Below, one piece after another: positions 6,544 to 61,051 of a DNA stretch of 64,000 nucleotides (positions are counted from its first letter, which is position 1; each line of letters begins with the position of its first letter). The stretch is from the NCBI RefSeq assembly GCF_002113885.1, contig NW_018479870.1:4911-68910 (forward strand). Reading direction: 5' to 3'. A model generated the notes under the pieces. It was not told the DNA's origin. It saw nothing but the letters and a program-made list of their open reading frames with translations, and ran no database searches. The stretch comes from Mizuhopecten yessoensis. Taxonomy: Eukaryota. Made by a program: the position numbers and the translations under genes.

Positions 6544-8022
6544 ATGGAGTGTGACACACATACAGGTGAGAAAGTTTTCATGGTGTGTATATCATGTGAC
6601 AAGTTCCCCTTTGCCTGTGGAAATTGTCTTGAAGAGAAGCATGTAAAGCACGAAGTTCAGACATTGAGGAACGCCGCTCATTCTATCCTTCAGAATCTGG
6701 AAAAGGTAGAAACCGAGAATGTGCGGGTGTTTAAAGAGATCAAGTCGGATCTAGAGGGTCTCACCGAAATCAGAGAGGATCTGAAACAGGATGCTAATAA
6801 CGTAGATGATGAGATCGCGAAACGTGTTGATGTTATCAGAAGCAAAATCGACGAAGTCAACACGGAAGTAATACAGAAACACAAAACGGAAGTCGGTAAG
6901 AACGCGGAGTCCATTGACAGAACGGAGGAAGCTCTGAAAAAACAGGTGGCCCAAATAAAAACGTTCAAAAAGAAGGTAGCTCAGCTACAGAAGATGAACG
7001 ACTACGTGGACGTGATTGAGTCGGGAAGGGAGGTTAAGGTGCCGGATACCAACCGCATCCCTAGGCCGGACATACAAGCCCTAACATTTAGCCCCGGGAC
7101 TGTCAGGGACGGAGAACTTAAACGAATGTTTGGAGGTATTAACACCATGTCGTCTGACTTCGTTGGTTCGATCGAAAGAGAATCAAATATCAAAGTAACA
7201 CCAGTAACATCCTTCAAACTTCCTAAAGATGATGGCATAGATACTATGTTTTGTTCTAAGCCAGGACATTGCTGGTTAAAATGTAAGGATAAAAACACCG
7301 TTAAACTTTTAAACACCTCTGGAGAAACTTTGCAAGCTGTCAAGCTAGAAACGCAGACAAATGGATTTACTGTCACTTCAAATAACAGGTTACTGTTCTG
7401 TTGTGCAACTCCGCAATGTGTCAAGAAAATGAACCTTCCAAACGGAGAGATCACAGAGAAGTTCAGCACTAGTCCACTGACACCCAACTACATATGTACA
7501 GGTCCGTCTGGGGACATATACGTGACGCTGTTTGACAAGAATGATTACAAATTAAAAAAAGACAGTACCCGTGTGTTGATCCAATACAACAGTAGGGGAC
7601 TAGAAAAGGCTCGGTGTCAGACAGATGTCTTTGGCGAATGTCTCTTTGTTGTACCAATGGACGTCTTTGTGAACAATAAGGGCACCCGAGTGGCAGTAAT
7701 TAACGAGATTCGTGTCAATCGCAGCGAGTTAGTTGTTCTTGACCAGGACCTATCTCCTCTCTTTGTCTATACAGGACCCAGCGTGTTGACAGGCAGATCA
7801 CTGTCAGGGTTTAAGATTAATGGTGCTACGTTTGATACAAGAGACAATATTTTGGTTGCTGAAGAGAATAGTCAAACTATCCAGTTGTTGAGTCCATCTT
7901 GTGAGCCCCTTAAGGTCCTGAGGGCCATGGAAGCCTCACCATGGACCTTGTCCTTGCATGGGAATGAGGTTTGGGTAGGGTATGATGAAGGAGAAGTAGA
8001 TGTCTTCAGGTATTCTTACTAA
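6544..8022 (+). CDS. RING-less TRIM-like protein (B-box, coiled coil, NHL/beta-propeller), copy 1, intact, 492 aa
   Basis: B-box CxxH..CxxC..CxxC..HxxH, heptad-rich helical region, propeller blades (GFTVTSNNRLLFC, PNYICTGPSGDIYV, FDTRDNILVAE, PWTLSLHGNEVWVG). Confidence 0.9.
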   Translation: MECDTHTGEKVFMVCISCDKFPFACGNCLEEKHVKHEVQTLRNAAHSILQNLEKVETENVRVFKEIKSDLEGLTEIREDLKQDANNVDDEIAKRVDVIRSKIDEVNTEVIQKHKTEVGKNAESIDRTEEALKKQVAQIKTFKKKVAQLQKMNDYVDVIESGREVKVPDTNRIPRPDIQALTFSPGTVRDGELKRMFGGINTMSSDFVGSIERESNIKVTPVTSFKLPKDDGIDTMFCSKPGHCWLKCKDKNTVKLLNTSGETLQAVKLETQTNGFTVTSNNRLLFCCATPQCVKKMNLPNGEITEKFSTSPLTPNYICTGPSGDIYVTLFDKNDYKLKKDSTRVLIQYNSRGLEKARCQTDVFGECLFVVPMDVFVNNKGTRVAVINEIRVNRSELVVLDQDLSPLFVYTGPSVLTGRSLSGFKINGATFDTRDNILVAEENSQTIQLLSPSCEPLKVLRAMEASPWTLSLHGNEVWVGYDEGEVDVFRYSY

Positions 8023-8679
8023 GGTATGTTAACGCTACAGCTTGACCAAAAAGATAATATGAGATGAAGTCATAATTTCTAATGTAATAATATCTTTGAT
8101 ATATATACATGTAGCTTGCATCCGAGTCAATCTCATAATTAACGTATTAGGAGAAAAGTCCAGATAAGAACTAGTTTATTTGGAGTTACCAAACAGATGA
8201 ACGGGATATTTGAAAATGAAAACATAAATCAAATATGTATTTCTAGTTGTCCAAATTTTTTCATGATTTTAAGCTATATTAATGGTATCCCATTGATGAT
8301 GACGTCATTGGTCAGGTTAAGATTTGCGCTATTGACTATATAAAACAGCCCCACTGTCAATATTTTCCAACAAACTAAACCAATATTTGTCACTATATTT
8401 TAACATATTAACTACAGCAACAGTTTCAAATTGAAAACTCATGTTTCTTTGTAGATAATTTACTCGATGAACTCCTTGGGAATCTCTGTCCCAGCTTTGG
8501 TGGTAACGGGTTGATGCTGGTCATCGGACATGTTTTGTTGTATGGAAGGCAGATTAAATAAAAAGGGAAAGAGCAGACAGATAATTGGGTGTGTGCGGAG
8601 CTATCCAAAATTGCCGGCACGGGCGCTTTACATGATGTCCAGGTATTTTGTTATGTGCGGAGCTATGTAGACAAGGAAT

Positions 8680-8860
8680 ACAGTGTATAGAGCACAAGGC
8701 TTTCACCAAGATAGCTGGGGTTCGACTGCCTGACGTGAAAAAATGTCATCTACCCCACCACGTGGGTTTTTTCCAGATATTCCGGTTTCAGCATACATTC
8801 AGACCACCTGCGCACTAACATTTAGGCAAATAAGTGTGATAAATTTAGGTTGATAACGAT
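8680..8860 (+). mobile_element. Degenerate tRNA-derived SINE with a V/Meta-like central domain (paralogues near 13840, 34265, 52995)
   Basis: B-box-like GGTTCGACTGCC followed by CACGTGGGTTTTTTCCAGATATTCCGGTTTC. Confidence 0.5.
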
Positions 8861-10704: not shown

Positions 10705-11030
10705 GCGAAAGTCCGACCTTGACGGTCTCACCAAAAATTAGAGAGAAACTGTAACTCGGATCAAATTTCGTAAAATAAAAAATGTTGAACATGAAAGTGA
10801 GTCTACAACGTAAAGAAGGGAGTACATCATATACCTAGAATGGGGCTTGGAAAGAACATGGATGCCGCATAAAAACCAAAGCAAGCTCTAATTAACAGTT
10901 ATCCCAAATTGCCAGAATCCAGAGACAGGTGGCTCAGCTTAAAGATATGAACAATTACGTTGACGTGATCGTAACTAGCAGAAACATGGAAGTCCCGAGG
11001 CACAGCTGCAACCTGAGGCTTAACTTACAA
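10705..11030 (+). pseudogene. Decayed TRIM-like coiled-coil fragment (copy 2)
   Basis: Similar to the CDS (GACCTTGACGGTCTCACC, GGGCTTGGAAAGAACATGGATGCC, AACAATTACGTTGACGTGATCGTAAC) with many indels and stops. Confidence 0.75.
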
Positions 11031-11474
11031 TAACGTCAGTTTGTGATGGGGGTGGGCTGGGGTGTATTACGTTTAAAGATTGCCTAGAGACAGCAAGGTC
11101 GGTCAAGCGCCAACTTATAGCCTTAGCTTAAACACGCACAAAAATAACATACAATCGGTCATATTTTCTAACTTCCATACTATTCCAAACTCCCAAGGAT
11201 AACAGTGAAACATGTATTTCGTATATAAAGAGTTTGTGAAATACAAGCTACAAAGACAAGTATCGCTGTAGTGTATTTGATACGATTATAACCACTCACT
11301 TCATATCAGGTAAAACACAGTGTGTTACGCACAAAGTGTGCTAGATTATGACACTTATATTTTATCAGCTATATATTATCAATAACGTGACTGACGACGT
11401 GTAACAAAAGTATACCGATAGGAGAAGATCTCGACAAAAATATCATTTTTATCTGAGAGCATCATCGTGAGACA

Positions 11475-13028
11475 ATGGAGTGTGCCACACATACAGGTGA
11501 GAAAGTGTTCGTGGTGTGTAAATCATGTGACAGGATCCCCTTTGTCTGTGGAGTTTGCCTTGAAGAGGAGCATGCAGAGCACAAACTACAGACATTGAGG
11601 AACGCCGCTCAGTCTATCCGACAGAATCTGGAACAGGTAGAAACCGAGAATGGTCAGGTGTTTAAAGAAATCAAATCGGATCTAGATGGTCTAACCGAAA
11701 TCAGAGAGGATCTGAAACAGGATGCTTCTAACATAGATGATGAGATAGCGAAACGTGCTGATATTATCAGAAGTAAAATCGACGAAGTCAACACGGAAGT
11801 AATACAGAAACACATAACGGAACTCGGTAAGAACGCGGAGTCCATTGACAGAACGAAGGAAACTCTGAAACAACAGGTGTCCCAAATAGACACGTTCAAG
11901 ATGAAGGTAGCTTAGCTACAAAAGATGACCGACTACGTAGACGTTATTAAGTTGGGAAGGGATGTGGAGGTGCCGGATACCAACCGCGTCCCCAGACCGG
12001 ACATACAAGTCCTAATATTCATTCCCGGGGGTATCAGGGAGGGAGAACTGAAACGATTGTTTGGAGGTATTAAAGGGGCATTTGATAACGGTAACAATGA
12101 CGCTACTACGGTCACATGTGATGACAGGGCAGAGGGGAATGACGATAAAACCAACATGTCTGACTTTGTTGGCTCGATTAAAAGAGAAGCATGCATCAAA
12201 CTAACACCAATTGCCTCTTTTAATCACTCTAAACATGATGGTATACATGCTATGTTTTGTCCTGGATCAGGAACTGGCTTGTTTAAATTTGAGGGTAAAA
12301 ACAGTGTCAAACTTTGCAACAGATCCGGAAATATTAAAGCAGCTATCAATCTAGGAACTAAGACTGAAGGATTTACTGTCACTTCAGATAACAGGCTACT
12401 ATTCTGTTGTACAAGTCAGCAGTGTATCAAGGAGATGGAGCTGCCTAATGGCGATATTACAGAGACGTTCAGCACTAGTCCACTGACACCTAGCTATATA
12501 TGTACAGGTCCGTCTGGGGACATATATGTGACAATGTACGACGAGCATGATTATGACGTAACAGACGACAGTACCCGTGTGTTGGTCCGGTACGACAGTC
12601 AGGGGCGCAACAAAACCCAGTGTCAGGTTGATGGTAATGGTAGAAACATCTTTGTTGTACCATGTAAAGTCTGTGTGAACAGAAGTGGCACCCAAATAGC
12701 GGTTATTAACCACGTAAATGAAAGACGCAGTGAACTAGTTGTACTTGACAAGTACCTATCTCCTATATTGATTTATACAGGACCCAGCGTGTTGACCGGG
12801 GACGCCCTAGCAGGGTATGTTCTCTCTTGTGTTGTATTTGATACAAGAGACAATATTTGGATAGCTGAATGTTACAGCAAAACTGTGAAGTTACTGAGTC
12901 CAACCTGTGAGCCACTTCAGGTTCTGCTGACCATGGAAACTTCACCATGGTCCTTGTCCTTGCACGGGGATGAGGTTTGGGTCGGAGATGGCTAGGGAAA
13001 AGTACAGATCTTAAGGTATTCTTACTAA
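11475..13028 (+). pseudogene. TRIM-like copy 3, near-identical to copy 10, with two nonsense mutations
   Basis: TAG at 11913-11915 (CAG in copy 10) and TAG at 12993-12995 (GAG in copy 10). Confidence 0.9.
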
Positions 13029-15059
13029 GGTATGTTAACGCTACAGTATGATCGAACATATGTTACCAAATTGTTTAGTCATAATTGATGTAATTATATC
13101 TTTGATATGGTTCACCACTCAGTCAATGTCACAATCGAAGATATCAGGAAAAGAATACACCATATGAGAAAAAGTTGATTTTAAGCTATATGAATGTGAT
13201 CCCATTGATGATTAAGTGATTGGTCAGGTTAAGATTTGCGCTATTGATTACATAAAACAGCTCCACTATCAATATTTTCCAACAACGTAAACCAATATTG
13301 GCTACCATATTTTAACATAATTATTAACTACAGCAACAGTTTTTCGAGAAATGTACAAAACTGCACATTTACGTCATCAATATATTATCGTCAGTGAGAA
13401 ACTGATTTATGTCACTGATCAACATCATAGGCTAATCTGATAAAAGTAGTTAACATTAAGTCAACAAAATGTACGTAATTAAGACATATCCAAAACCAAT
13501 TAGAAGTCATAATAAGATATTTACATCTTGCCATTACCAACTATGCAAATGAAAATTCACGTTTCTTTGTAGATAATTCCTCGATGACTTCCGTGGGAAT
13601 CTCCGTCCCAATATTGATTATTATGGACTGACGACAGTATCGGAAAAAGCGATACCAAATACAATATTGAAATATGGTCATACAGGTGATTAGGTGTATG
13701 GAAAGGAGATGAGAGATATTTGGTGAATTGGAAAAGAGAGGCCAGATACAAAACATATAGTAATTGGGTGCCCGCGGAAGGTATCCAGATTATTGAGTGC
13801 GTGAGAAATGGTATGCAGAAGAAGACAACATGAGATCATATATCCAGTGGACAGATCACTTGGTTTATCGAGATGGCCAGTGTTCGATTCGCTCACCGAC
13901 GTGAAAAGTAAAAGGGTAACCTGCCCGATCACGTGGGGTTTCCGGCTTCTTCCTCACCACGACCCTCAGCACGCTATCCTCCGGGCCAGCAACATGTATA
14001 TGGGGAGTGTTGGGGAGGGTTATTGAATATAATATGCAGTCGAGGATGACCGCAAAATTAAGACTGTTTTGAGAATGTCAACATATACAGTGTGTGAAAT
14101 GTGGGAGATTTAGAATATTTTTGCTGATTTTTTTAGTACATAATTAAGCACTGATATGGAACTGACGAACTTTTTAAGTTCTGAATGAGAGCCCGCAGAA
14201 GTTCACATGGCCCTGAATAACGATGGCTAGCCATTTAATAGTTGATTTATCGATCGAATTTTACCAGAATTCATTAACGATTCTAAAATATCAGATAAGA
14301 AAATCCTGCACAATGACATAATCTGGAAACATTGAATTAGGCTTAATGTATGTTTTTAACACAATTGAGAGATGGGAATATGTTTTCTATGTAAATATCT
14401 ATATGGAATTGTATAACGAGGCAATGTAGTGTGATATCGTACTTTGAATGAAAGTTTAACTGGTTTCATTAAATAGGCTCATTGCAAACAATAGCCTTAC
14501 ATCTGACTTTTGCAATAAATATTGTCAATTTGATCAACATTTGGCCACAAAGAAAGATAATATAATGAACAGACAGTATCAATGTCTACATAGCCTGCAA
14601 ATTTGTTTTTTTAAACAACCAGTCAAGACTTTGGGATTAATGAATTATTCATAGTAAGGTTACTCAAATTTGATTTTTATTTTAATCTCGAATGTGAATT
14701 AACTTACCTTCCTTCCTCATCAGTGATAAGATGAACTGCTTCAGCTATTGTGTAGTCACTGGTAAAAAGTATTAGGGTATTATTAGGGTATAAAATGTAG
14801 GTTCTATCCATTTTATAATGTATATTCCAAATAAAATGCTTTTAAAATCTAAACGGTTTTTTTCTTTTCTTTCCATTTGAACATTTCAGTGTTTCCCCTT
14901 TAAGTAATACGCGTTGTGGGCGTTTATCGTGATAATTAAGTGTACATTAAGGGCCAAAAATCAATAATCTTCCCATTGATCACTCAAACCAACACAACGT
15001 GTGACAAAAGATGATACAATCTACAGGCGAAAAAACCACAGCGTCAAAGCGAAAACAGC

Positions 15060-15650
15060 AGGGACATAGTCAGAACACAACGGTGACAAGGTGAGAACAC
15101 TACGGTGACAGGGTGAGAACACCATAGTGACAAGGTGAGAACACGGCGGTGACAGGGTGATAACAACACAGTGTGAGGGTGAGAAAACATCACGTGACAG
15201 AATGAAAACATCACGTGACATGGTGAGAACACCACACTGACAGGGTGAGAACACAACAGTGACAGAGTGAGAACAGCAAAGTGGAAGGGTGAGAACATGA
15301 CAGTGACAGGGTGAGAACACCATAGTGACAGAGTAAGAACAGCAAGGTGACAGGGTGGGAACACCACAGTGACAGGGTGAGAACACGACGATGACAGGGT
15401 AATAACACGACAACAAAAGAGTGAACACGACAGTGACAGAGTGAGAACAAGACAGTGACAGGGTGAGAACACGACAGTGACAGGGTGAGAACACGACGAT
15501 ATCAGTGTGAGACCAACACAGTGACAGAGTGAGAACACGACAGTGACAGGTAATAACACGACAATGCCAGGGTGAGAACATGATGGTGACAGAGTGAAAA
15601 CACTACGGTGACAGGGTGATAACACCACAGTGACAGAGTGAGACACGACG
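15060..15650. repeat. 22-bp minisatellite (GTGACAGGGTGAGAACACGACG), medium array
   Basis: Tandem degenerate units. Same left flank as the arrays at about 41466 and 54160. Confidence 0.95.
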
Positions 15651-16830
15651 AATGAAAAATGAAGTGCATTAAAAACATAAAATGGAGCTTGGTAAGAACA
15701 TGGAAGCCATAGACAAAACAGAACAAGCTCTGAAGCAACAGTTTTCCCAGATTGCCACATTCCAGAGGAAGGTGGTTCAGCTTAAAAACATGAACGATTA
15801 TGTAGACATAATCGTAACAGGCAGAAATGTGGAGGTCCCACAAAGCAGCAGACGCATCCCCAGGCTAGACATACACGCCCTGGTGTTCCTCCCCGGGGCT
15901 GTCAGGGACGGAGAACTTGAACGAATGTTTGGGAGTATTTAAGGGGCATCTGATCATGCCAATAACAATGAGAATAAAAGGGACAAGTCATCCGACTTTT
16001 TTGGTTTGATCGAAAGGAAATCAAAAATCAAAGTTAGGCCAGTTACATCATTTAAACTTTCAAAAACATGTTGATGTAGATAATATGTTTTGTCCTAAAT
16101 CTAAAGTTTGCTGGCTAAAATGCCAGGATAAAAGCTGTGTTAAACTGTCCAAGAGGTCTGGAGAAATTAAACAAGTTATTAACCTGGGAACTAGGTCGGA
16201 TGGATTTACTGTACGTGCAGATAATAAGCTTCTGTTCTGTTGTACACTACAGAAATGTATCAAGGAGATCGCTCTACCAAATGGTGAGATTACAGAAAAG
16301 TTCATCACCTGTCCTCTCACACCAAACCGTATATGTACAGATCCATCTGGGGACATATATGTAACACTATGCGACGAAAATGACTATGAAGTAACAGATG
16401 ACAGTACCCGTGTGTTGGTCCGATACGACCGGTGGGGGAAGAGGCGGCTCGTTGTCAGGCTGATGGATATGGAGGAAGCCAGGTTGTTGTACCAGATGAC
16501 GTCTGTGTGAACAACACGGGCACCCGAGTAGCGGTCATTAACCTTAAAAGTGACAGACGCAGAGAACTAGTTGTTCTTGACGAAGACCTATCTCCTGTTT
16601 TAATCTGTACAGGACCCAGGATATTGATTGGGAATTTCCTGGCAGGGTATAGTCTCTATTGTGCGGTTATTGATACGAGAGAAAATATGCAGTTACTGAG
16701 TCAATCGTGCGAGCCATTGAAAGTCCTGCTCACCATGAACACTACACCATGGGCCATGACTATACAGGGAAATGAGGTTTGGATTGGAGACGATAAAGGA
16801 AAAGTACTGATCTTCAGGTATTCTTACTAA
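15651..16830 (+). pseudogene. TRIM-like copy 4 (copy 11 type), 5'-truncated and frameshifted
   Basis: Starts abruptly in the coiled coil, fused to the minisatellite. Stop at 15940-15942, frameshifts near 16065 and 16435, internal deletion near 16685. Confidence 0.9.
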
Positions 16831-16866
16831 AAGGTAAGTTAACGTTAGGAAAGGTAAAAATTCAAA

Positions 16867-41556: not shown

Positions 41557-41603
41557 GCAGTTTCACAAGATGTTTTTTTTTTTAAAACAAATACATATTT
41601 GTT

Positions 41604-48660: not shown

Positions 48661-49656
48661 CTCCTTATCAAGAATAAAACCATGTCATCATTTGACTAAG
48701 ACACTAACCGGTTGGATTTGTATTGCTCAGCAATAACTACAATGTATAATATTTCAATCTTCAATATATATATGAATTCAAAATTTCCTTTTTTTCCTGT
48801 ACTTCTTTCTACCGATTATTTCCAAGCAATGAATATATCTTCACCGTGATCATTTGTATGAAATAGAAAATATTAAATGAATGGGATTCTTGAGTTGGTG
48901 TAACTTGCATCCAATGCATTTTGTACGATATTGCAAATAAAACATGCTCAAACTCTAACAAGGATTTTCCATGTGTGGTCAATTTAGTGTTCAACTTCAA
49001 ACTAATGGAGTCTTGTTATATGGGTTTTTTGTAAAACTAACTTCATGTGTAAAACCATACATAACAAAAGATTCAATGTTCTGTGGAACTTGACTAATTA
49101 TACAGTGGTTTACAATTTTAAACGTCCATTGACTATTGTAAAAGGAATACATTGGATATAGCAAAAACAAGTTTTAATTGTGTTAAAACTCTATTTATAG
49201 CAACCTATCAATAGCATGGTAAGCGGTGTAATAAAATACAGCCTGACGCGTATACACGCGTATTTTAAACGATAAGCGTAGGCTTATTTTGAGTAAACAA
49301 CTTCGATACCATGGAGTGTCGACACATACAGGTGAGAACAGTGATTCATGCAAATCATATATAAACTGTGTGTGAAATATAGGCTACACATACTTGAAGT
49401 GTGTTTATAAAACCAAAACCACTGTTCTAGTAAATAACACTTACTTTCTTATCAGTTATTTCTTATCAATAACGTGACTGATGACGTAACAAAAGTATAC
49501 CGATAGGAACATATCTCAACAAAAACATCATTTTGAGCTGAGGACATATATTTATAGCAACCTATCAATAGCGTGGTTAGCGACGTAATTCAATACAGCC
49601 TGGCGCGTATACATGGAATACTGTAAACGATAAACGTAATAAACAGCTTTAATACC

Positions 49657-51210
49657 ATGGAGTGTGCCACACATACAGGTGAGAAAGTCTTCATGGTGTG
49701 CAAATCATGTGACAGGATCCCCTTTGTCTGTGGAGTTTGCATTGAAGAGGAGCATGCAGAGCACAAACTACAGACATTGAGGAACGCCGCTCAGTCTATC
49801 CGGCAGAATCTGGAACAGGTAGAAACCGAGAATGGTCAGGTGTTTAAAGAGATCAAATCGGATCTAGATGGTCTCACCGAAATCAGAGAGGATCTGAAAC
49901 AGGATGCTTCTAACATAGATGATGAGATAGCGAAACGTGCTGATATTATCAGAAGCAAAATCGACGAAGTCAACACGGAAGTAATACAGAAACACAAAAC
50001 GGAAGTCGGTAAGAACGCGGAGTCCATTGACAGAACGGAGGAAACTCTGAAACAACAGTTGTCCCAAATAGGCACGTTCAAGACGAAGGTAGCTCAGCTA
50101 CAAAAGATGAACGACTACGTAGACGTTATTAAGTTGGGAAGGGATGTGGAGGTGCCGGATACCAACCGCGTCCCCAGACCGGACATACAAGTCCGAACAT
50201 GCATTCCCGGGGGTATCAGGGAGGGAGAACTGAAACGATTGTATGCAGATATTAAAGGGGCATTTGATAACGGTAACAATGACGCTACTACGGTCACAGG
50301 TGATGATAGGGCAGAGAGGAATGACGATAAAACCAACATGTCTGACTTTGTTGGCTCAATTAAAAGAGAAGCATTCATCAAAGTAACACCAATTGCATCT
50401 TTTAATCACTCTAAACATGATGGTATAGATGCTATGTTTTGTCCTGGATCAGGAACTGGCTTGTTTAAATTTGAGGGTAAAAACAGTGTCAAACTTTGCA
50501 ACAGATCCGGAAATATTAAAGCAGCTATCAATCTAGGAACTAAGACTGAAGGATTTACTGTCACTTCAGATAACAGGCTACTATTCTGTTGTACAAGTCA
50601 GCAATGTATCAAGGAGATGGAGCGGCCTAATGGCGATATTACAGAGACGTTCAGCACTAGTCCACTGACACCTAGCTATATATGTACAGGTCCGTCTGGG
50701 GACATATATGTGACAATGTACGACGAGCATGATTATGACGTAACAGACGACAGTACCCGTGTGTTGGTCCGGTACGACAGTCAGGGGCGCAACAAAACCC
50801 AGTGTCAGGTTGATGGTAATGGTAGAAACATCTTTGTTGTACCATGTAAAGTCTGTGTGAACAGAAGTGGCACCCAAATAGCGGTTATTAACCACGTAAA
50901 TGAAAGACGCAGTGAACTAGTTGTACTTGACAAGTACCTATCTCCTATATTGATTTATACAGGACCCAGCGTGTTGACCGGGGACGCCCTAGCAGGGTAT
51001 ATTCTCTATGGTGTTGTATTTGACACAAGAGACAATATTTGGGTAGCTGAATGTTACAGCAAAACTGTGCAGTTACTGAGTCCAACCGGCGAGCCACTTC
51101 AGGTCCTGTTGACCATGGAAACTTCACCATGGTCCTTGTCCATGCACCGGGATGAGGTTTGGGTCGGGGATGGCGAGGGAAAAGTACAGATCTTCAGGTA
51201 TTCTTACTAA
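49657..51210 (+). CDS. RING-less TRIM-like B-box/coiled-coil/beta-propeller protein, copy 10, intact, 517 aa
   Basis: Full ORF with B-box and propeller motifs and an acidic linker insertion (DNGNNDATTVTGDDRAERNDD). Confidence 0.9.
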   Translation: MECATHTGEKVFMVCKSCDRIPFVCGVCIEEEHAEHKLQTLRNAAQSIRQNLEQVETENGQVFKEIKSDLDGLTEIREDLKQDASNIDDEIAKRADIIRSKIDEVNTEVIQKHKTEVGKNAESIDRTEETLKQQLSQIGTFKTKVAQLQKMNDYVDVIKLGRDVEVPDTNRVPRPDIQVRTCIPGGIREGELKRLYADIKGAFDNGNNDATTVTGDDRAERNDDKTNMSDFVGSIKREAFIKVTPIASFNHSKHDGIDAMFCPGSGTGLFKFEGKNSVKLCNRSGNIKAAINLGTKTEGFTVTSDNRLLFCCTSQQCIKEMERPNGDITETFSTSPLTPSYICTGPSGDIYVTMYDEHDYDVTDDSTRVLVRYDSQGRNKTQCQVDGNGRNIFVVPCKVCVNRSGTQIAVINHVNERRSELVVLDKYLSPILIYTGPSVLTGDALAGYILYGVVFDTRDNIWVAECYSKTVQLLSPTGEPLQVLLTMETSPWSLSMHRDEVWVGDGEGKVQIFRYSY

Positions 51211-51301
51211 GGTATGTAAACGCTACAGCTTGATCGAAAATATATTACCAAATTGTATAGTCATAATTGACGATGTAAATATATCTTTGATATGGTTCAC
51301 C

Positions 51302-52186
51302 TTAAAAATAGCTTTTTTCCTAGAATGATGTCTCTATGGAATAGGCCAGACTGTATTTTTCCAAAACTCACTTGAGCCAGTTAAAACTGGAATTACTTAA
51401 GGAAAGCACACACGTTTTGCAACCATCTAACTGTACAGATATTTTAAATACGGTAGCTCCAGGAAGTTGAATATAACATGATGTCAAATACTAAATAAAG
51501 TCAGCCAATTAAAATCAGATTTATATAATGATCATCTTACAGATAACCCTATTTGTGACTGTGGTTATATTATTGAAGATGCAAATCACTTCTTCCTCAA
51601 TTGCCCCAAATATATAGATGAAAGACAAGTTTTATTCAATGCGTTATCTAATTTTAACGAAATTGATAACATCATCTTAATACTGTTACTTTAGCTAAGG
51701 GTGATATGAACGTTAGCAGTGAATCAAATAAATGTATTCTCTCATGTGTTCTGGAGTTTATTGAAAAATCTAGAAGATTTTAACTTAAACTATACTAAAA
51801 ATTATCTTACAATGTGTTTGTATTTGCTATCTTATAACAATAACTCTGGTGTAATGTGGAAGGATGGCACTGTGTATAGTGACAGTGTCTTTGAAGTGCC
51901 TCCAACCAAACACTAGGCTATTAATAATTGAAGTAAATAGACTATAGTAATTGAAATGCTAAAATCTATGATATTCTAGTTATTATTTTCTGTGAACATG
52001 TATTAAATGGTTCTAGTATTCTCCTATTCATTTGAACATATACTTCATCTTCTCTATAATACTCTCTCTCTATATAGATGTATATATGAAATGTGAGTAT
52101 TTTCTCTGGAAAGGGCTTTTGTAGGCAATGCCTGTGCCTAATCCAATTGTGTTTTTTGAATACAATAAAATTGATTTGAAATAAAA
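51302..52186 (+). mobile_element. 5'-truncated LINE (CR1/L2-like) insertion
   Basis: 12-bp TSD ATATGGTTCACC at 51290-51301 and 52187-52198. Empty site in the paralogue near 13105. Encodes ..PICDCGYIIEDANHFFLNCPKY.. and has AATAAA near the 3' end. Confidence 0.85.
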
Positions 52187-54159
52187 ATATGGTTCACCAC
52201 TCTGTCAATGTCACAATCGAAGATATAAGGAAAAAGAATACACCATAAGAGAAATAGTTCATTCGGATCTACCAGACAGATGATGAGATATTTGAAAATA
52301 GAAAAATAAATCACAACTATCAACTATTTCTATTTTTAAGCTATATTAACGGAATCCCATTGATGATGACGTCATTGGTCAGGTTAAGATTTGTGCTATT
52401 AACTATATAAAACAGCTCCACTATAAAACATTTCCAACAAAGTAAACCAATATTTGCTACCATATTTTAACATATTAACTACAGCAACAGTTTTTCGAGA
52501 AATGTACAAAGCTGCACACTTACGTCATCAATATATTATCGTCAGTGAGAAACTGATTTATGTCACTGATCAACATCATAGGCTAATCTGATAATAGTAG
52601 TTAACATTAAGTCAAAACAATGTACGGAATTAAGACATATCCAAAACCAATTAGAAGACATAATAAAATATTAACATCTTGCCATTAACAACAATGCAAA
52701 TGAAAATTCACGTTTCTTTGTAGATAATTCCTCGATGACTTCCATGGGAATCTCCGTCCCATTATTGATTATTATGGACTGACGACAGCGATCGGAAAAA
52801 GCCATACCAAATATAAAATTGAAATATGGTCATACAGGTGCTTAGGTGTATGGAAAGGAGATAAGAGATATTTGGTGAATTGGAAAAGAGAGGCCAGATA
52901 CAAAAAAATATAGTAATTGGGTGCCCGCGGAGGGTATCCAGATTATTTAGTGTGTGAGAAATGGTATGCAGAAGAAGACAACATGAGATCATATATCCAG
53001 TGGACAGATCACTTGGTTTATCGAGATGGCAAGTGTTCGATTCGCTCATCCGACGTGAAAAGTAAAAGGGTAACCTGCCCGATCACGTGGGGTTTCCGGC
53101 TTCTTCCTCACCACGACCCTCTGCACGCTACCCTCCGGGCCAGCAACATGTATATGGGGAGTGTTGGGGAGGGTTATTGAATATAATATGCAGTCGAGGA
53201 TGACCGCAAAATTAAGACTGTTTTGAGAATGTCAACATATACAGTGTGTGAAATGTGGGAGATTTAGAATATTTTGGCTGATTTTTTTAGTACATAATTA
53301 AGCACTGATATGGAACTGACGAACTTTTTAAGTTCTGAATGAGAGCCCGCAGAAGTTCACATGGCCCTGAATAACGATGGCTAGCCATTTAATAGTTGAT
53401 TTATCGATCGATTTTTACCAGAATTCATTAACAATTCTAAAAAATCAGATAAGAAAATCCTGCACATATGAAAGACAAACTCTGCTAAATAATGACATGA
53501 TCTGGAAACCTTGAATGAGGCTTATTGTATGTTCTTAACACAATTGAGATATCTATATGGCATTGTATAACGAGGCAGTGTAGTATGACATAGTATTTTG
53601 AATGAAAGTTTAACTGGTTTCATTAAATAGGCTCATTGCAAACAATAGCCTTACATCTGACTTTTGCAATAAATATTGTCAATTTGATCAACATTTGGCC
53701 ACAAAGGAAGATAATATAATGAACAGACAGTATCAATGTCTACATAACCTGCACATTTGTTTTTTTTAAACAACCTGTCAAGATATTGGGATAAATGAAT
53801 TATTCATAGCAAGGTTACCAAATTTGATTTTTAGTTTAATCTAGAATGTGAATTAACTTACCTTCCTTCCTCAGTGATAAGATGAACTGCTTCAGCTATT
53901 GTGTAGTCACTGCTAAAAAGTATTAGGGTATTATAATGCTGGTAAAATATAGGTCTGATCCATTTTATAATGTATATTCCAAATAAAATGCTTTCAATAT
54001 CTAAAAGTAGTCTTTTTTTCATGTGAACATTTCAGTGTTTCCATTTTAAGCAGTACGCGTTGTGGGCATTTATCGTGATAATTTAGTGTAAACACAATGT
54101 GTGACAAAAGATGATACAATCTACAGGCGAAAAGAACACAGCGCCAAAGCGAAAACAGC

Positions 54160-57100
54160 AGGGACATAGTCAGAACACAACGGTGACAGGGTGAGAACAC
54201 GACGATGACAGGGTGTGAACACGACGGTGACAAGGTGTGAACACGACGGTGACAAGGTGTGAACACGACGGTGACAAGGTGTGAACACGACGATGACAGG
54301 GTGTGAACACGACGGTGACAGGTGTGAACACCACAATGACAGGGTGTGAACACCACAGTGACAGGATGAGATCACCACAGTGACGGAGTGAGAGCACGAC
54401 GGTGACAGAGTGAGAACACGACGGTGACAGGGTGAGACCACCACAGTGACAGGATGACCACACCACAGTGACAGGGTGAGAACACCAGAGTGACAGAGTG
54501 AGAACACAACAGTGACAGAGTGAGAGCACGACGGTGACATGGTGAGAACACCACAGTGACAGGGCGAGAACACATCAGTGACAGAGTGAGAGCACGACGG
54601 TGACATGGTGAGAACACGACGGTGACAGAGTGAGAACACGACGGTGACATGGTGAGAACACCACGGTGACAGGATGACCACACCACAGTGATAGGGTGAG
54701 AACACCAGATGACAGAGTGAGAACACAACAGTGACAGAGTGAGAGCACGACGGTGACAGAGTGAGAACACCATAATGACAGGGTGAGAACACGACGGTGA
54801 CAGGGTGAGAACACCATAGTGACAGGTTGAGAACACAACGGTGATACGGTGAGAACATCGCAGTGATATGATGAGAACACCACAGTGACAGAGTGAGAAC
54901 ACGATGGTGACAGGGATTAGAACACCAGTGACAGGATGAGAACACAACAGTGACAGGGTGAGAACACGACGGTGACAGGGTGAGAGCATGACGGTAACAG
55001 GGTGAGACCACCACAGTGACTGGGTGACCACACGACGGTTACAGGGTGAGAGCACGACGGTGACAGGGTGAGAACACCATAATGACAGGGTGAGAACACG
55101 ACGGTGACAGGGTGAGAACACCATAGTGACAGGTTGAGAACACGATGGTGACAGGGTGAGAACACCACAGTGACAGAGTGAGAACACCACATTGACAGGA
55201 TGAGACCACCACAGTGAAAGGGTGAGAATACGACGGTGATAGGATGAGATTACCACAGTGACAGGATGAGAACACCACAGTGACAGGGTGAGATCACGAC
55301 GGTGACAGGGTAATAACACAACAACAAAAGAGTGAATACGACAGTGACAGAGTGAGGACACTAGATTGACAGAGTGAGAACACGACAGTTACAGGATGAA
55401 AACACGACGGTTATAGGATTAGAACACGACGGTGACAGAGTGAGACCACCACAGTGACAGGATGACCACACCACAGTGACAGGGTGAGAACACCACAGTG
55501 ACAGAGTGAGAACACAACAGTGACAGAGTGAGAAAACGACGGTGACATGATGAGACCACCACAATGACAGGGTGAGAACACCACAGTGACAGGGTGAGAA
55601 CAGGACGGTGACAGGGTGAGCCCACCACAGTGACAGGATGAGAACACCACGGTGACAGAGTGAGAACACGACGGTGACAGGGTGAAACCACCACAGTGAC
55701 AGGATGAGAACACCACAGTGACAGGATGTGATTACTACAGTGACAGAGTGAGAGCACCACAGTGACAGAGTGAGAACACCATAGTGACAGGGTGAGAACA
55801 CGACAGTGACAGACTGAGAACACGACGGTGACAGGGTGAGAACACGACGGTGACAGACTGAGAACACGACGGTGACAGGGTGAGAACACTATAGTGACAG
55901 GTTGAGAACACAACAGTGACAGGGTGAGAACACGACGGTGACAGGGTGAGAACACAACAGTGACAGGGTGAGAACACGACGGTGACAGAGTGAGAGCACG
56001 ACGATAACAGGGTGAGACCACCACAGTGACAGGGTGAGAACACGACGATGACAGGGTGAGAACACGACGGTGACAGGGTGAGAACACCATAATGACAGGG
56101 TGAGAATACGACGGTGACAGGGTGAGAACACCATAGTGACAGGTTGAGAACACAACGGTGATAGGGTGAGAACATCGCAGTGACATGATGAGAACGCCAC
56201 AGTGACAGAGTGAGAACACGATGGTGACAGGGATTAGAACACCAGTGACGGGATGAGAACACAACAGTGACAGGGTGAGAACACGACGGTGACAGAGTGA
56301 GAACACGACGGTGACAGGGAGAGAACACCATAGTGACAGGTTGAGAACACCACGGTGATAGGGTGAGAACATCGCGGTGACATGATGAGAACGCCACAGT
56401 GACAGAGTGAGAACACCATAGTGACAGGGTGAGAATACGACGGTGACAGGGTGAGAACACCATAGTGACAGGTTGAGAACACGACGGTGATAGGGTGAGA
56501 ACACCGCAGTGACATAATGAGAACACCACAATGACAGAGTGAGAACACCACATTGACAGGATGAGAACACCACAGTGAAAGGGTGAGAATACGACGATGA
56601 TAGGATGAGATTACCACAGTGACAGGATGAGAACACCACAGTGACAGGGGGAGATCACGACGGTGACAGGGTAATAACACGACAACAAAAGAGTGAACAC
56701 GACAGTGACAGAGTGAGGACACTAGATTGACAGAGTGAGAACACGACAGTTACAGGATGAAAACACGACGGTTATAGGATTAGAACACGACGGTGACATA
56801 GTGAGAACACGACGATGACAGGGTGAGAACACTACGGTGACAGAGTGAGAACACGACGGTGACAGAGTGAGAACACCACAGTGACAGGATGAGAACACGA
56901 CGGTGACGGAGTAAGACCACGACAATAGCTGAGTGGGAACACCACATTGACAGAGTGAGAACACCACAGCGACAAAGTGAGAACACAACGCGACGGTGAC
57001 AGGGTGAGAACACGACGGTGACAGAGCGAGAACATGACGATGACGGAGTAAGACCACGACAATGGCGGGGTGAAAACACCACAGTGACAAGAGTGAGAAC

Positions 57101-57785
57101 ACGATGGTGACAAGAGTGAGACACGACGGTGACAGAGTGAGACACGACGATGACAGAGTGAGAGCAAGACGATGACGGAGTAAGACCACGACCACGGCGG
57201 AGTGAGAACACCACAGTGACAGAGTGAGAACATCACAGTGACAAGAGTGAGAACACCACAGTGGCAGGATAAGAACTAGCCGGTGACAGAGCGAGAACAC
57301 GACGACGACTGAGTAAGACTATGACAATGGCGGAGTGAGAACATCACAGTGACAAGAGTGAGAACACAATGGTGACAAGAGTAAGACACGACGTCGACAG
57401 AGTGAGAGTACAACGGTGACAGAGTGAGAGTACAACGATAAGGGAGTAAGACCACGACAACGGCGGAGTGAGAGCATCACAGTAACAAGAGTGAGAACAC
57501 GACGGTGACAAGAGTCAGACACGACGGTGACAGAGTGAGAGCACGACGGGTGAGAACGCGACGGTGACAGCGTGAGAACACGACGGTGACAGAGTGAAAA
57601 CACGACGCGACGATGACAGAGTGAGAACATGACAAGACGGTGAAAGAGTGAGAATAAGACGGTGGCAGAGTGAGAACACGACGCGACGGTGACAGGGTGA
57701 GAACACGACGGTGACAGAGTGAGAACGCGACGGTGACAGCGTGAGAACACGACGGTGACAGAGTGAAAACACGACGGTGACAGAG
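54160..57785. repeat. 22-bp minisatellite, about 3.6-kb array with a ~1.3-1.4-kb higher-order duplication
   Basis: The diagnostic variant block GTGAGGACACTAGATTGACAG occurs at about 55355 and 56715. Confidence 0.97.
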
Positions 57786-58654: not shown

Positions 58655-59279
58655 TAACAGTACCCAAATCGGGACACTTTTAAGTGAAATAATGATGTAT
58701 TTCATACCATAGTACCGATCCCAGTGATTTGTGTTCCCTTTTCCTATATAGATATCATTATCTTTTCATTTTGATAACAAGTTAATATTTCCGGCACGTG
58801 GTTCTATAAATAGAACCGGAAATATAGTCATGGTTGCGTAATCGCGAAACAGGTGAAGCTGTACCCAAATCGGGACACCCCTACCAGTTTTGGCTTATAT
58901 TTGGAGATGAAAAAAGTATTTAGCAGAACATGGCATATCTTTGGAATATTTAAGAGCCAAGAGTCGTTCTGAATGAATTTCTTTTCCAAACTACCACTGT
59001 GAAATAGTAGGATTGTGAAAAGTAACATTAAAAAAATGAAAATCAATAACGTCGCATATATATGGCGCATCAATTTAGAACGTTACATTTTCGTCATTAT
59101 TTACAAACTAAAACTGTGATTGTAACCGTAAGTGGCAGTAAATAAAGTTCATATAACTGTTTATTGGTATATAAGCATCTTTAAATCAATATTTTCAATT
59201 TTAAAATCCTTCTTTGCACAGCATGCACATTTCTTGTGACTTTTTCCTGAAGTGTCCCGATTTGGGTACTGTGGCGTTA
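58655..59279. mobile_element. MITE with TIR CAGTACCCAAATCGGGACACTT in the upstream region of copy 11
   Basis: Paralogue of 20731-21354. Absent upstream of copy 9. Confidence 0.8.
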
Positions 59280-59530
59280 GTGTTGTGACCTATTTAAGTT
59301 TCTGGCAGACCTACATATATGGCTTCGACCAAAGTTAAAATACGTTATTATGACCTCTCGGTTTCCCTCCAAGACTTAAAATCGCAAACAAACGGTGCCC
59401 GCGAGTAAACTTCAACTACGCCCATGCGCACACGGCGGCGCGCATTCGCGTCACTGTATTTCCTTGGCACGGTAATTTGTGTGACACCGGAAAACGAACC
59501 AGGCACGTGCTGTTTAGAAGTCTAATGAAA

Positions 59531-61051
59531 ATGGAGTGCGTTTACCACAAAGATGAGACTGTCATAATGGTATGTACTCACTGTGACAAGTATCCATTTG
59601 TGTGTGCTATTTGTGTGGAGGAAGATCATGCTGAACACAGACTCGCTTCATTGAGATCTGCCGCACAGTCAATCCGACAAGAGTTGGAGCAGGCACAGTC
59701 AAACAATTTACATGTGTTTGAGGAAATCAAGTCTGATCTGGACAATCTCGCCAAAATCAGAGAGAATCTGCAACAGGGAGCACATCTCGTGGAAAATCAA
59801 ATGGTGAAACGTCAAAATATTATGAAAAGTGAAGTCGACACTGTGAAAAACGAAGTGCATTATAAACATCAAATGGAGCTTGGTAAGAACATGGAAGCCA
59901 TCGACAAAACAGAACAAGCTCTGAAGCAACAGTTTTCCCAGATTGCCACATTCCAGAGGAAGGTGGTTCAGCTTAAAAACATGAACGATTATGTAGACAT
60001 GATCGTAACAGGCAGAAATGTGGAGGTCCCACAAAGCAGCAGACGCATCCCCAGGCTGGACATACATGCCCTGGTGTTCCTCCCCGGGGCTGTCAGGGAC
60101 GGAGAACTTGAACGAATGTTTGGGAGTATTAAAGGGGCATCTGATCATGCCAATAACAATGAGAATAAAAGGGACAAGTCATCTGACTTTTTTGGTTTGA
60201 TCGAAAGGAAATCAAAAATCAAAGTAACGCCAGTTACATCATTTAAACTTTCAAAACATGTTGGTGTAGATAATATGTTTTGTCCTAAATCAAAAGTTTG
60301 CTGGCTAAAATGCCAGGATAAAAACAGTGTTAAACTTTCCAACAGGTCTGGAGAAATTAAACAAGCTATAAACCTGGGAACTAGGTCGGATGGATTTACT
60401 GTAAGTGCAGATAATAAGCTTCTGTTCTGTTGTACACTACAGAAATGTATCAAGGAGATCGCTCTTCCAAATGGTGAGATTACAGAGAAGCTCAGCACTT
60501 GTCCTCTCACACCAAACCGTATATGTACAGATCCATCTGGGGACATATATGTAACACTATGCGACGAAGATGACTATGAAGTAACAGATGACAGTACCCG
60601 TGTGTTGGTCCGGTACGACCGGTGGGGGGAAGAGGCGGCTCGTTGTCAGGCTGATGGATATGGAGGAAGCCTCTTTGTTGTACCTGAGGATGTCTGTGTG
60701 AACAACACGGGCACCCGAGTAGCGGTCATTAACCGTGTAAGTGACAGACGCAGAGAACTAGTTGTTCTCGACGAAGACCTATCGCCTGTGTTAATCTATA
60801 CAGGACCCAGGGTGTTGACTGGGGACTCCCTGGCAGGGTATAGTCTCTATGGTGTGGTATTTGATACCAGAGACAATATTTTGGTTGCTGAATGTTATAG
60901 CAAAACTGTGCAGTTACTAAGTCCATCTTGCGAGCCATTGAAAGTCCTGCTCACCATGAACACTACACCATGGGCCATGACTATACAGGGAAATGAGGTT
61001 TGGATTGGAGACGAGAAAGGAAAAGTACAGATCTTCAGGTATTCTTACTAA
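59531..61051 (+). CDS. RING-less TRIM-like B-box/coiled-coil/beta-propeller protein, copy 11, intact (start MECVYH; alternative ATG at 59525)
   Basis: Full ORF with B-box CVYH..CTHC..CAIC..HAEH and propeller motifs, ending FRYSY. Confidence 0.9.
   Translation: MECVYHKDETVIMVCTHCDKYPFVCAICVEEDHAEHRLASLRSAAQSIRQELEQAQSNNLHVFEEIKSDLDNLAKIRENLQQGAHLVENQMVKRQNIMKSEVDTVKNEVHYKHQMELGKNMEAIDKTEQALKQQFSQIATFQRKVVQLKNMNDYVDMIVTGRNVEVPQSSRRIPRLDIHALVFLPGAVRDGELERMFGSIKGASDHANNNENKRDKSSDFFGLIERKSKIKVTPVTSFKLSKHVGVDNMFCPKSKVCWLKCQDKNSVKLSNRSGEIKQAINLGTRSDGFTVSADNKLLFCCTLQKCIKEIALPNGEITEKLSTCPLTPNRICTDPSGDIYVTLCDEDDYEVTDDSTRVLVRYDRWGEEAARCQADGYGGSLFVVPEDVCVNNTGTRVAVINRVSDRRRELVVLDEDLSPVLIYTGPRVLTGDSLAGYSLYGVVFDTRDNILVAECYSKTVQLLSPSCEPLKVLLTMNTTPWAMTIQGNEVWIGDEKGKVQIFRYSY

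What the first reader, a model, noticed from the sequence alone, without database searches (positions are those of the whole stretch)
6544..61051. Birth-and-death tandem array of RING-less B-box/coiled-coil/beta-propeller genes with hypervariable propeller patches: a candidate diversified immune-recognition locus
Seen: 11 co-oriented copies or fragments in 55 kb, only 3 intact. Framework motifs are conserved (ICTGPSGDIYV, ELVVLD, RYSY) but fixed short patches differ: NEIRVNRS / NHVNERRS / NYINDNRR / NDIAIRRG / NRVSDRRR; GFKING / GYILYG / WFLLNG / EYKPND / GYSLYG; PMDV / PCKV / PGEV / PEKV / PEDV. Established: TRIM C-terminal domains determine ligand specificity, NHL propellers bind RNA or protein on one face, and TRIM-like families are expanded in bivalves. 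Inference: diversifying selection on a ligand-binding face. Lacking a RING, these proteins may act as sensors or heterodimer partners.
Basis: partly seen in the sequence, partly recalled or inferred. Interest (0 to 1): 0.7.

Follow-up and report, generated by a model that had tools for sequence, protein, structure and literature searches.

The report
Scallop RING-less B-box/NHL gene array
A scallop gene for a two-armed binding protein (zinc-finger B-box, coiled coil, six-bladed NHL propeller, no ubiquitin-ligase RING) has multiplied into a messy tandem array with three live and seven dead copies that swap sequence among themselves; tests found no positive selection on the variable patches, so this is an ordinary member of a large mollusc gene expansion.

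Summary
The window carries ten sizeable co-oriented copies and two small fragments of one gene family. Three copies are intact (A 6544-8022, I 49657-51210, J 59525-61051) and seven are broken.

The proteins are RING-less B-box2 / coiled-coil / six-bladed NHL propeller proteins. This is shown by the AlphaFold model, by Foldseek matches to the TRIM2, LIN-41 and Brat NHL domains, and by profile hits to TRIM B-box/coiled-coil structures. Gene I is transcribed and spliced in four independent studies.

They lie on one propeller face (blades 4-5) and are more variable than average. They are not the most variable segments.

Codon models give no positive selection:
- M2a versus M1a LRT is 0 in every data set and in each recombination-free segment.
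- M8 versus M8a LRT is 0.03.
- Patch omega is about 1.0 within the species and 0.46-0.57 across species.
- No more FEL sites than chance.
- Simulations show omega of 3 or more on 7% of sites would usually be detected.

The copies are mosaics made by gene conversion, including exchange with pseudogenes. An immune role was not tested.

The scan has already noted several sister arrays of this family elsewhere in this genome. Follow-up notes on those arrays claim positive selection, and I could not reproduce that here.

Verdict: a new member of a known kind, of modest interest.

The parts
6544..8022 (+). Gene A: intact single-exon CDS, 492 aa, B-box/coiled-coil/NHL propeller. A GT donor follows the stop.
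10709..11051 (+). Small coiled-coil fragment of a J-type copy.
11475..13028 (+). Pseudogene B: 97% identical to I, with TAG stops at 11913 (codon 147) and 12993 (codon 507).
13573..15050 (+). Copy of I's 3'UTR second exon, downstream of B (88% identical, acceptor kept).
15072..15649 (.). 22-bp minisatellite, 26.5 units. Copy C begins at its edge.
15637..16830 (+). Pseudogene C: J-type, lacks the first ~100 codons, has frameshifts, two TAA stops and a 30-nt deletion.
21616..22552 (+). Pseudogene D: J-type, with a 1-nt frameshift and a 520-nt internal deletion.
26223..26315 (+). B-box fragment.
30066..30257 (+). Fragment E: 64 codons of propeller blades 1-2.
32214..33724 (+). Pseudogene F: A-type (88% identical), with a net frameshift at codons 197-200. 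The downstream ORF still spans the whole propeller.
36093..37570 (+). Pseudogene G: several frameshifts and a TAG. F-like up to about residue 320, very divergent after that.
42366..43859 (+). Pseudogene H: J-type (96% identical), six frameshifts and two stops.
49318..51211 (+). Gene I exon 1: 5'UTR from at least 49318, CDS 49657-51210 (517 aa). The exon ends one base after the stop.
51212..52723 (+). 3'UTR intron of gene I (GTATGT...TTGTAG), removed in RNA contigs from four studies.
52724..52753 (+). Start of gene I's second, non-coding exon. Only these 30 nt are verified by the loose ends.
54172..57783 (.). 22-bp minisatellite, 164 units, between I and J.
59525..61051 (+). Gene J: intact single-exon CDS, 508 aa from the first ATG (506 aa from the MEC start at 59531). 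Its N-terminal type is old and distinct.

Best explanation
This is a lineage-specific tandem cluster in a pectinid scallop. It belongs to the large mollusc family of RING-less TRIM-like proteins.

Architecture. Each live gene has one coding exon. It encodes a B-box2 zinc finger, a helix of about 110 residues of the kind that forms the antiparallel TRIM coiled-coil dimer, an acidic disordered linker, and a six-bladed NHL propeller. A non-coding exon follows, spliced on right after the stop codon.

How the array arose and evolves. It grew by DNA-level segmental duplication, including a two-gene block. It is eroded by nonsense mutations, frameshifts, deletions and minisatellite-bounded truncation. 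Each of three lineages (A, I, J) now keeps exactly one intact gene. The copies also exchange tracts by gene conversion, with break points inside the propeller and with pseudogenes taking part. The coding sequence is under purifying to relaxed constraint: omega is 0.3 across species and about 0.5 among paralogues, and about a third of sites are near neutral. No positive selection is detectable.

Inferred mechanism. The proteins form dimers that hold two propellers and bind a ligand on the D-A/B-C face. The ligand is more likely protein than RNA. Having no RING, they act as adaptors, as competitors, or as partners of RING-bearing TRIMs, not as E3 ligases themselves.

Shown here: the architecture, the array history, the transcription of I and the selection regime. 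Inferred only: dimerisation, the ligand face, the adaptor role and any immune role.
For: - Architecture: AF2 model with mean pLDDT 80 and about 90 in the propeller. It has 24 strands forming six blades, and one helix spanning residues 41-150.
- Foldseek top hits are the NHL domains of TRIM2, LIN-41, Thin, Brat and TRIM3, with target TM 0.72-0.78.
- A profile of 17 family members hits TRIM3, TRIM28, TRIM25 and TRIM5 B-box/coiled-coil structures at E 5e-9 to 9e-6, and the TRIM2 NHL domain at 6.5e-6.
- Pfam NHL is above threshold in I and J. The eight zinc ligands C3, H6, C15, C18, C25, C28, H33 and H36 are conserved.
- Array history.
- Mosaicism. Synonymous divergence for F-G is 0.067 in the N-terminal half against 0.57 in the propeller. 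For I-A it is 0.165 against 0.50, and for I-J 1.12 against 0.46.
- Trees for the two halves conflict with 97-100% support. Identity steps lie inside the propeller. I and B share a 376-nt identical tract (P<5e-5).
- Selection: with power and null simulations.
- Transcription. Contigs 100% identical over 50014-51211, from four runs in four studies, jump from 51211 to 52724 across a GT-AG intron. Intergenic DNA is uncovered.
- Family context. There are 92 or more matches genome-wide, and relatives at about 30% identity are also single ORFs starting at the B-box. Many mollusc Atlas clusters carry B-box plus NHL with no RING listed.
Against: - Dimerisation, the ligand and the binding face are inferred from homology only.
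- Only gene I was tested for transcription. Tissue and treatment are unknown.
- Only 3 to 9 intact sequences were available, so weak positive selection (omega about 2 on a few per cent of sites) would be missed. It was detected in 1 of 6 simulations.
- The assembly is fragmented and built from short reads. Single lesions (B, F) and the identical I/B tract could therefore be assembly errors.
- Earlier notes of this scan report positive selection in sister arrays of the same family.
Confidence: 0.62

Rival explanations
1. The array is a diversified intracellular immune-recognition repertoire, and positive (diversifying) selection on the ligand-binding face of the propeller drives the differences between copies.
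For: - The three patches lie on one face in adjacent blades.
- Top-face loops have a somewhat higher omega than strands or bottom loops: 0.61 against 0.45 and 0.39.
- The fastest sites lean towards that face: 10 of 25 and 6 of 12.
- Copy number differs between scallop species.
- TRIM-like transcripts are prominent in oyster infection and tolerance studies (PMC9044936, PMC9892467).
- Earlier scan notes claim positive selection in sister arrays.
Against: - No site class with omega above 1 appears in any data set or segment.
- Patch omega is about 1 within the species and significantly below 1 across species.
- FEL gives 0-1 sites at P<0.05.
- The face enrichment is not significant.
- Equally variable segments lie on the other face.
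- Seven of ten copies are dead.
- No expression data under challenge were available.
Confidence: 0.15
2. The proteins are Brat/LIN-41-like post-transcriptional regulators. A RING-independent TRIM-NHL protein binds specific mRNAs on the propeller's top face and represses them, for example in the germ line or in development. The duplicates are redundant copies that are decaying.
For: - The closest folds are RNA-binding NHL domains: LIN-41 bound to RNA, and Brat.
- Brat works without a RING (established knowledge, recalled from memory).
- An Arg-rich B4-C4 loop ('RR') is kept in most members.
- Transcripts turn up in many unrelated RNA data sets.
Against: - The D-A/B-C loops carry a net negative charge in all nine intact members, -3 to -12 by a crude loop count. 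Brat and LIN-41 have a basic RNA-binding face.
- Sequence identity to those domains is only 10-17%.
- There is no filamin domain and no second B-box.
Confidence: 0.13
3. The whole locus is decaying and has no function. The three open frames simply have not been hit yet.
For: - Seven of ten copies are dead.
- Omega among paralogues is high, at about 0.5, and 35-40% of sites are near neutral.
- A Harbinger transposase abuts A's 5' flank.
Against: - Omega is 0.30 across species, and 80 of 278 propeller codons are under significant purifying selection.
- Intact orthologues exist in Argopecten and Ylistrum.
- Gene I is transcribed and correctly spliced in four studies.
- The post-stop splice donor is conserved across genera.
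Confidence: 0.05

Closest known systems
TRIM-NHL proteins (TRIM2, TRIM3, TRIM32, TRIM71/LIN-41)
   Same: B-box2, long coiled coil and C-terminal six-bladed NHL propeller. This rests on profile hits to the TRIM3 B-box/coiled coil (E 5e-9) and the TRIM2 NHL domain (E 6.5e-6), and on Foldseek target TM of 0.77.
   Different: There is no RING, so no intrinsic E3 module. There is no filamin domain and only one B-box. The CDS is intronless, and the genes sit in a tandem array with pseudogenes. Propeller identity is only 10-17%.
Drosophila Brat (a RING-less B-box/coiled-coil/NHL translational repressor; recalled from memory, not tested here)
   Same: The same RING-less domain order. The Brat NHL domain (1q7f) is among the top structural matches.
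   Different: Brat has two B-boxes, is single-copy and conserved, and has a basic RNA-binding top face. Here the top-face loops are net acidic, and the genes are multi-copy and turn over fast.
Mollusc 'hypothetical' B-box + NHL protein clusters (ESM Atlas) and the sister arrays in this genome
   Same: The same length (about 510-670 aa) and the same Pfam content (zf-B_box + NHL, no RING listed). Mollusca is the commonest phylum. The own genome holds 92 or more matches. Other windows of this scan describe similar arrays.
   Different: This subfamily (48% identity or more) was found only in scallops by the word search. It is about 30% identical to its nearest paralogues in the genome. In this array no positive selection was detected, unlike what the notes claim for the sister arrays.
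Vertebrate antiviral TRIM5 and fish finTRIM (B30.2 domain under positive selection)
   Same: Tandem, lineage-specific TRIM expansions with pseudogenes and a variable C-terminal recognition domain.
   Different: Those proteins keep the RING and use a SPRY/B30.2 domain. They also show a clear omega above 1 in surface loops (established knowledge). Here omega is 1 or below.

Membership tests
TRIM (tripartite motif) family, strict sense | N-terminal RING finger | tested here: not met
   The ORFs start at the B-box (M-E-C...H), and the frame is closed just upstream. RNA contigs over I's 5' end show no joint to an upstream exon. Public models in Argopecten and Ylistrum are 506-521 aa and start the same way. 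No RING family appears in Pfam.
TRIM (tripartite motif) family, strict sense | B-box type 2 zinc finger | tested here: met
   The ligand pattern C-x2-H-x8-C-x2-C-x6-C-x2-C-x4-H-x2-H is conserved in all intact members. A family profile aligns residues 2-146 to the B-box/coiled coil of TRIM3, TRIM28, TRIM5 and MID1/2 (E 5e-9 to 4e-3). Pfam zf-B_box scores 17.7-21.4 bits, below the 24.1 cut-off.
TRIM (tripartite motif) family, strict sense | Long coiled coil after the B-box | tested here: met
   The AF2 model has a single helix at residues 41-150, followed by short helices. The profile aligns to the TRIM25 and TRIM5 coiled-coil structures. Pfam TRIM_CC is below threshold (E 3e-4). Dimerisation itself was not tested.
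NHL-repeat beta-propeller | Six four-stranded blades with NHL repeat signatures | tested here: met
   The model has 24 strands at residues 242-516. Foldseek gives E 7e-14 and target TM 0.77 to the TRIM2 NHL domain. Pfam NHL scores 24.7 and 27.5 bits in I and J against a cut-off of 20, and 14.5 bits in A.
RNA-binding TRIM-NHL (Brat / LIN-41 type) | Positively charged top face that contacts RNA | tested here: inconclusive
   A loop-level charge count gives net -3 to -12 on the D-A/B-C loops of nine members. No coordinates or electrostatic map were available, so this is only indicative.
Diversified immune-recognition gene family | Positive selection (omega > 1) concentrated at ligand-contact sites | tested here: not met
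   M2a versus M1a LRT is 0 and M8 versus M8a LRT is 0.03. Patch omega is 1.0 within the species and 0.46-0.57 across species. FEL gives 0-1 sites at P<0.05. Power was checked by simulation.
Diversified immune-recognition gene family | Expression induced by pathogens or their mimics | not testable with these tools
   Run identities are coded, and only contigs could be laid, not counts.
Birth-and-death multigene family | Tandem duplicates, pseudogenes and lineage-specific copy number | tested here: met
   There are three intact and seven decayed copies. Block duplications are seen. Argopecten has at least 3 intact copies and 1 broken one within about 75 kb, Ylistrum has 2 in tandem, and Pecten maximus has 1 frameshifted copy.

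The most novel reading that the evidence does not exclude
Diversity in this array may be generated mainly by gene conversion between paralogues, not by point mutation under positive selection. The dead copies would then serve as a reservoir of propeller segments. The tracts that support this are F/G up to blade 2, I/B over blades 3-5, and an A-type patch in an I transcript of one animal. On this reading the three live genes are a shuffled, individually variable recognition set, and codon tests for omega > 1 would be blind to the process.
Probability: 0.12. Interest if true: 0.6.

Novelty: new member of a known kind. Interest (0 to 1): 0.3.

Why it matters
Bivalves carry hundreds of TRIM-like genes. 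These genes keep turning up in infection and tolerance transcriptomes, but nobody knows what the RING-less B-box/NHL branch binds or does.

This locus is a clean, small case. It has three live genes, each with dated dead copies. One gene has a verified transcript structure. The array also shows clear evidence that sequence exchange between copies, and not detectable positive selection, shapes the propeller.

It therefore cautions against reading variable loops in such arrays as proof of diversifying selection. It also gives concrete genes (A, I, J) for ligand pull-downs and challenge experiments.

Tried and rejected
- Literature searches for a described scallop or bivalve B-box/NHL family (papers read) found no paper on this family. 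They found only general reports of TRIM transcripts in oyster infection studies.
- The first tree runs failed on a thread setting and a missing file. They were redone.
- The first site-by-site (FEL-like) run gave about 40 'positive' sites. This was an optimiser artefact: Nelder-Mead was started at zero, so the null model was under-fitted. I discarded it and redid the analysis.
- In the first power simulation, 5 of 12 positive-control runs gave NaN from tiny negative transition probabilities. It was redone with clipping.
- A segment-wise run on 16 sequences timed out. It was redone on 6 sequences.
- Exact-protein look-ups for A, I and J in public assemblies found nothing, so the expression of A and J remains untested.
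- A tblastx search for synteny with the other scallop loci returned only repeats.
- Retroposition was rejected as the origin of the intronless CDS. Homology between copies extends 1-2 kb into the flanks, and every copy keeps the 3'UTR splice donor.
- The idea that the post-stop donor lets the ORF read into a shared downstream exon was rejected. The stop precedes the donor, and use of the nearby upstream GT would meet a stop at once (read).
- The big protein-representative search was not run. The family was not left open, and no claim here rests on the absence of relatives.
- N runs in the contig's left flank and in C3604 were left as they are.
The two exons of I were handled by reference only.

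Full report
**What is there.**
The window is G000:C76543:4911-68910 of a 988-Mb assembly in 82,659 contigs. The nearest named proteins are all from scallops: Argopecten irradians at 55-57% identity, Ylistrum balloti at 48-57% and Pecten maximus at 57%. The organism is therefore a pectinid scallop.

tblastn with the 517-aa product of ORF 49657-51210 finds ten sizeable copies and two small fragments, all on the + strand. Three are open from start to stop: A (6544-8022, 492 aa), I (49657-51210, 517 aa) and J (59525 or 59531-61051, 508 or 506 aa).

The other seven are broken:
- B has two TAG stops.
- C lacks about 100 codons at its 5' end, beginning at the edge of a 22-bp minisatellite, and has frameshifts and stops.
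- D has a frameshift and a 520-nt internal deletion.
- E is a 64-codon fragment.
- F has one net frameshift in the linker.
- G and H have many lesions.

No further copy lies in the rest of the contig. A second contig, C3604, holds one more pseudogene and fragments that are 88-92% similar to pieces of this window.

**What the protein is.**
- Pfam gives NHL above threshold in I and J. zf-B_box and TRIM_CC score below threshold.
- I aligned 17 family members: the three window genes, six scallop homologues, and eight paralogues at about 25-30% identity from the same genome. An AlphaFold model from this alignment has mean pLDDT 80, and about 90 in the C-terminal domain.
- The model shows a small zinc-finger-like N-terminus, one helix at residues 41-150, a disordered acidic linker at 184-238, and 24 strands at 242-516, which make six four-stranded blades.
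- Foldseek places the propeller next to the NHL domains of TRIM2, LIN-41, Thin, Brat and TRIM3 (E down to 7e-14, target TM 0.72-0.78).
- The family profile hits the B-box/coiled-coil structures of TRIM3, TRIM28, TRIM25, TRIM5 and TRIM72, and the NHL domains of TRIM2 and TRIM3.
- The eight zinc ligands of a B-box2 are conserved.
- There is no RING. The frame opens at the B-box, RNA contigs show no upstream exon, and public models in other scallops begin in the same way.
- The ESM Atlas holds many mollusc clusters of similar length with B-box and NHL and no RING listed, mostly named 'hypothetical protein'.
- The own genome gives 92 or more matches, many of them single open frames of 510-560 aa.

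The architecture is thus a known but uncharacterised mollusc expansion.

**Gene structure and expression.**
Twenty public runs from ten studies hold more than 60% of the sampled words of gene I. I laid contigs of four runs from four studies.
- The contigs cover about 49318/49600 to 51211 and leave the flanking intergenic DNA bare.
- In every run, a contig of 2.2-2.4 kb matches 50014-51211 without a single difference and then continues with sequence that is not adjacent.
- The 30-nt continuation matches 52724-52753 exactly.
- The genome reads TAA-G|GTATGT at 51208-51217 and ...TTTGTAG| before 52724.

Gene I is therefore transcribed and spliced. It has a 1512-nt intron in the 3'UTR that begins one base after the stop.

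Every copy in the window keeps a GT donor 1-3 nt after its stop, except D, where it is mutated. So do the Argopecten, Ylistrum (copy 1) and Pecten genes. This is an ancestral feature, and it also argues for DNA-level duplication and against retroposition.

I did not build a joined transcript. Tissue and treatment are unknown because the records are coded.

**History of the array.**
Self-comparison shows a mosaic of segmental duplications.
- The block B, 3'UTR exon, minisatellite, C is a copy of the block I, 3'UTR exon, minisatellite, J. Identities are 96.5% for 11472-13116 against 49654-51301, 87% for 13179-15650 against 52334-54752, and 91% for 15653-17196 against 59844-61396. The copy has since lost the stretch from the satellite into J's coding region.
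- D and H are further J-type copies, and C and D share 3 kb of downstream sequence.
- F and G are A-type copies.

Each of the three lineages thus has one live gene and one to three dead ones.

Other scallops differ:
- Argopecten has at least three intact genes and one broken one within about 75 kb.
- Ylistrum has two in tandem.
- Pecten maximus has one with a frameshifted N-terminal half.

**Mosaicism.**
- Synonymous divergence differs sharply between the N-terminal half and the propeller:

| Pair | N-terminal half | Propeller |
|---|---|---|
| F-G | 0.067 | 0.57 |
| I-A | 0.165 | 0.50 |
| I-J | 1.12 | 0.46 |
| Ylistrum pair | 2.3 | 0.73 |

- Trees of the two halves conflict with strong support. 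J groups with Ylistrum copy 2 in the N-terminal half (97%), but the two Ylistrum copies are sisters in the propeller (100%).
- Sliding identity puts the break points inside the propeller as well. F and G are 92-99% identical up to about residue 320 and 48-74% identical after it. The Ylistrum pair is 90-99% identical only in residues about 319-408.
- I and the pseudogene B are identical over 376 nt, against about 3% divergence elsewhere (permutation P<5e-5).
- One RNA contig of run X4 is I-like but carries six A-type bases within 37 nt.

Gene conversion or unequal recombination is therefore pervasive, and it involves dead copies. Assembly collapse could mimic the I/B tract.

I built a codon alignment of 18 sequences. 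I then wrote a Goldman-Yang site-model likelihood with F3x4 frequencies and free branch lengths.

Results on propeller codons 240-517:
- M0 omega is 0.30 for nine intact genes of four species, 0.36 for all 16 sequences, and 0.49 for the copies of this species.
- M2a collapses onto M1a (LRT 0) for the 6, 9 and 16-sequence sets and for the nine intact genes.
- M8 against M7 gives LRT 5.1 (P 0.08) with an extra class at omega 1.04. M8 against M8a gives 0.03.
- Three segments with their own trees, which do differ, give LRT 0-0.07.
- A fixed-partition test gives omega 0.45 for strands, 0.61 for D-A/B-C loops and 0.39 for A-B/C-D loops.
Across species they give 0.46-0.57, significantly below 1.
- A site-by-site test gives no site at P<0.05 in the within-species set and one of 278 in the full set. 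It finds 35 and 80 codons, respectively, under significant purifying selection.

Simulations on the same tree:
- Null data give LRT about 0.
- Omega 3 on 7% of sites is detected in 5 of 6 runs.
- Omega 5 on 5% of sites is detected in 6 of 6 runs.
- Omega 2 on 7% of sites is detected in only 1 of 6 runs.

Strong diversifying selection on the patches is therefore unlikely. Weak selection cannot be excluded.

**Where the variation lies.**
I numbered the strands by the NHL repeat register: A5 is residues 450-455, B5 is 461-465 and C5 is 470-474, matching the Pfam NHL hit. On this numbering the three patches fall at the end of the D3-A4 loop, in the B4-C4 turn and in the D4-A5 loop. All three are on the same face in adjacent blades. 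By convention this is the 'top' face, which binds RNA in Brat and LIN-41 (from memory of the literature).

However:
- The ten most variable six-residue windows also include A1-B1 and C3-D3 turns on the other face, and a strand of blade 6.
- The fastest sites are only weakly enriched on the D-A/B-C face: 10 of 25 (P 0.09) and 6 of 12 (P 0.07).
- The D-A/B-C loops are net acidic in all nine intact members. This speaks, weakly, against an RNA-binding face of the Brat type.

**Verdict.**
It is not supported on diversifying selection, and the immune role remains untested.

The scan has already described several sister arrays of this family in the same genome. Some follow-up notes claim positive selection for those arrays. 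That claim was not reproduced in this array, and I did not test the other arrays.

The locus is best filed as a new member of a known, uncharacterised mollusc expansion of RING-less TRIM-NHL-like genes. Its most interesting feature is the extent of sequence exchange between live and dead copies.

Noticed in passing
window 5522-6430 (-), with 3704-4339 (+): A Harbinger/PIF-type transposase ORF (DDE_Tnp_4, E 1e-12) ends 113 nt upstream of gene A's ATG. Only 6435-6543 of A's 5' flank is shared with gene I, so A's promoter may have been replaced.
   Followed up: partly
window 50428-51001 and 12246-12819: The intact gene I and the pseudogene B are identical over 376 nt and nearly identical over about 570 nt. 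They differ by about 3% elsewhere (permutation P<5e-5). This is either recent gene conversion with a pseudogene or an assembly collapse.
   Followed up: partly
window 49909-49945: An RNA contig of run X4 is I-like over 458 nt but carries six bases typical of gene A within 37 nt. It may be an allele with a conversion tract, or a chimeric contig.
   Followed up: partly
window 15072-15649 and 54172-57783: A 22-bp minisatellite (26 and 164 units, GC 50%, strongly purine-skewed on the + strand) sits after the 3'UTR exon of B and of I. It marks the break point that truncated copy C. Its long open frames on the minus strand are repeat artefacts.
   Followed up: yes
window 8022, 13028, 16830, 33724, 37570, 43859, 51210, 61051; L031:11521, L034:11521, L032:6215, L033:11065: A GT splice donor lies 1-7 nt after the stop codon in every copy here and in the Argopecten, Ylistrum and Pecten orthologues. 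This ancestral 3'UTR intron starts so close to the stop that it should not trigger nonsense-mediated decay.
   Followed up: partly
L032:4659-6215: In Ylistrum balloti the first tandem copy is a full 518-aa open frame. The public model (P0008, 360 aa) starts at an internal Met. Likewise B, F and the Pecten copy retain open frames that cover the propeller alone, so propeller-only products are conceivable.
   Followed up: no
G000:C3604:9650-25800: A second, smaller decayed array (one pseudogene and three fragments) lies at the start of an 818-kb contig. Its pieces are 88-92% similar to this window, in reverse order. It could be the continuation of this locus, a paralogous cluster, or a very divergent haplotype.
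   Followed up: partly
window 18759-19431, 24487-25160, 38495-39094, 40279-40724: Further tandem repeats with periods of 127-158 bp lie inside the duplicated intergenic blocks. They were not characterised.
   Followed up: no
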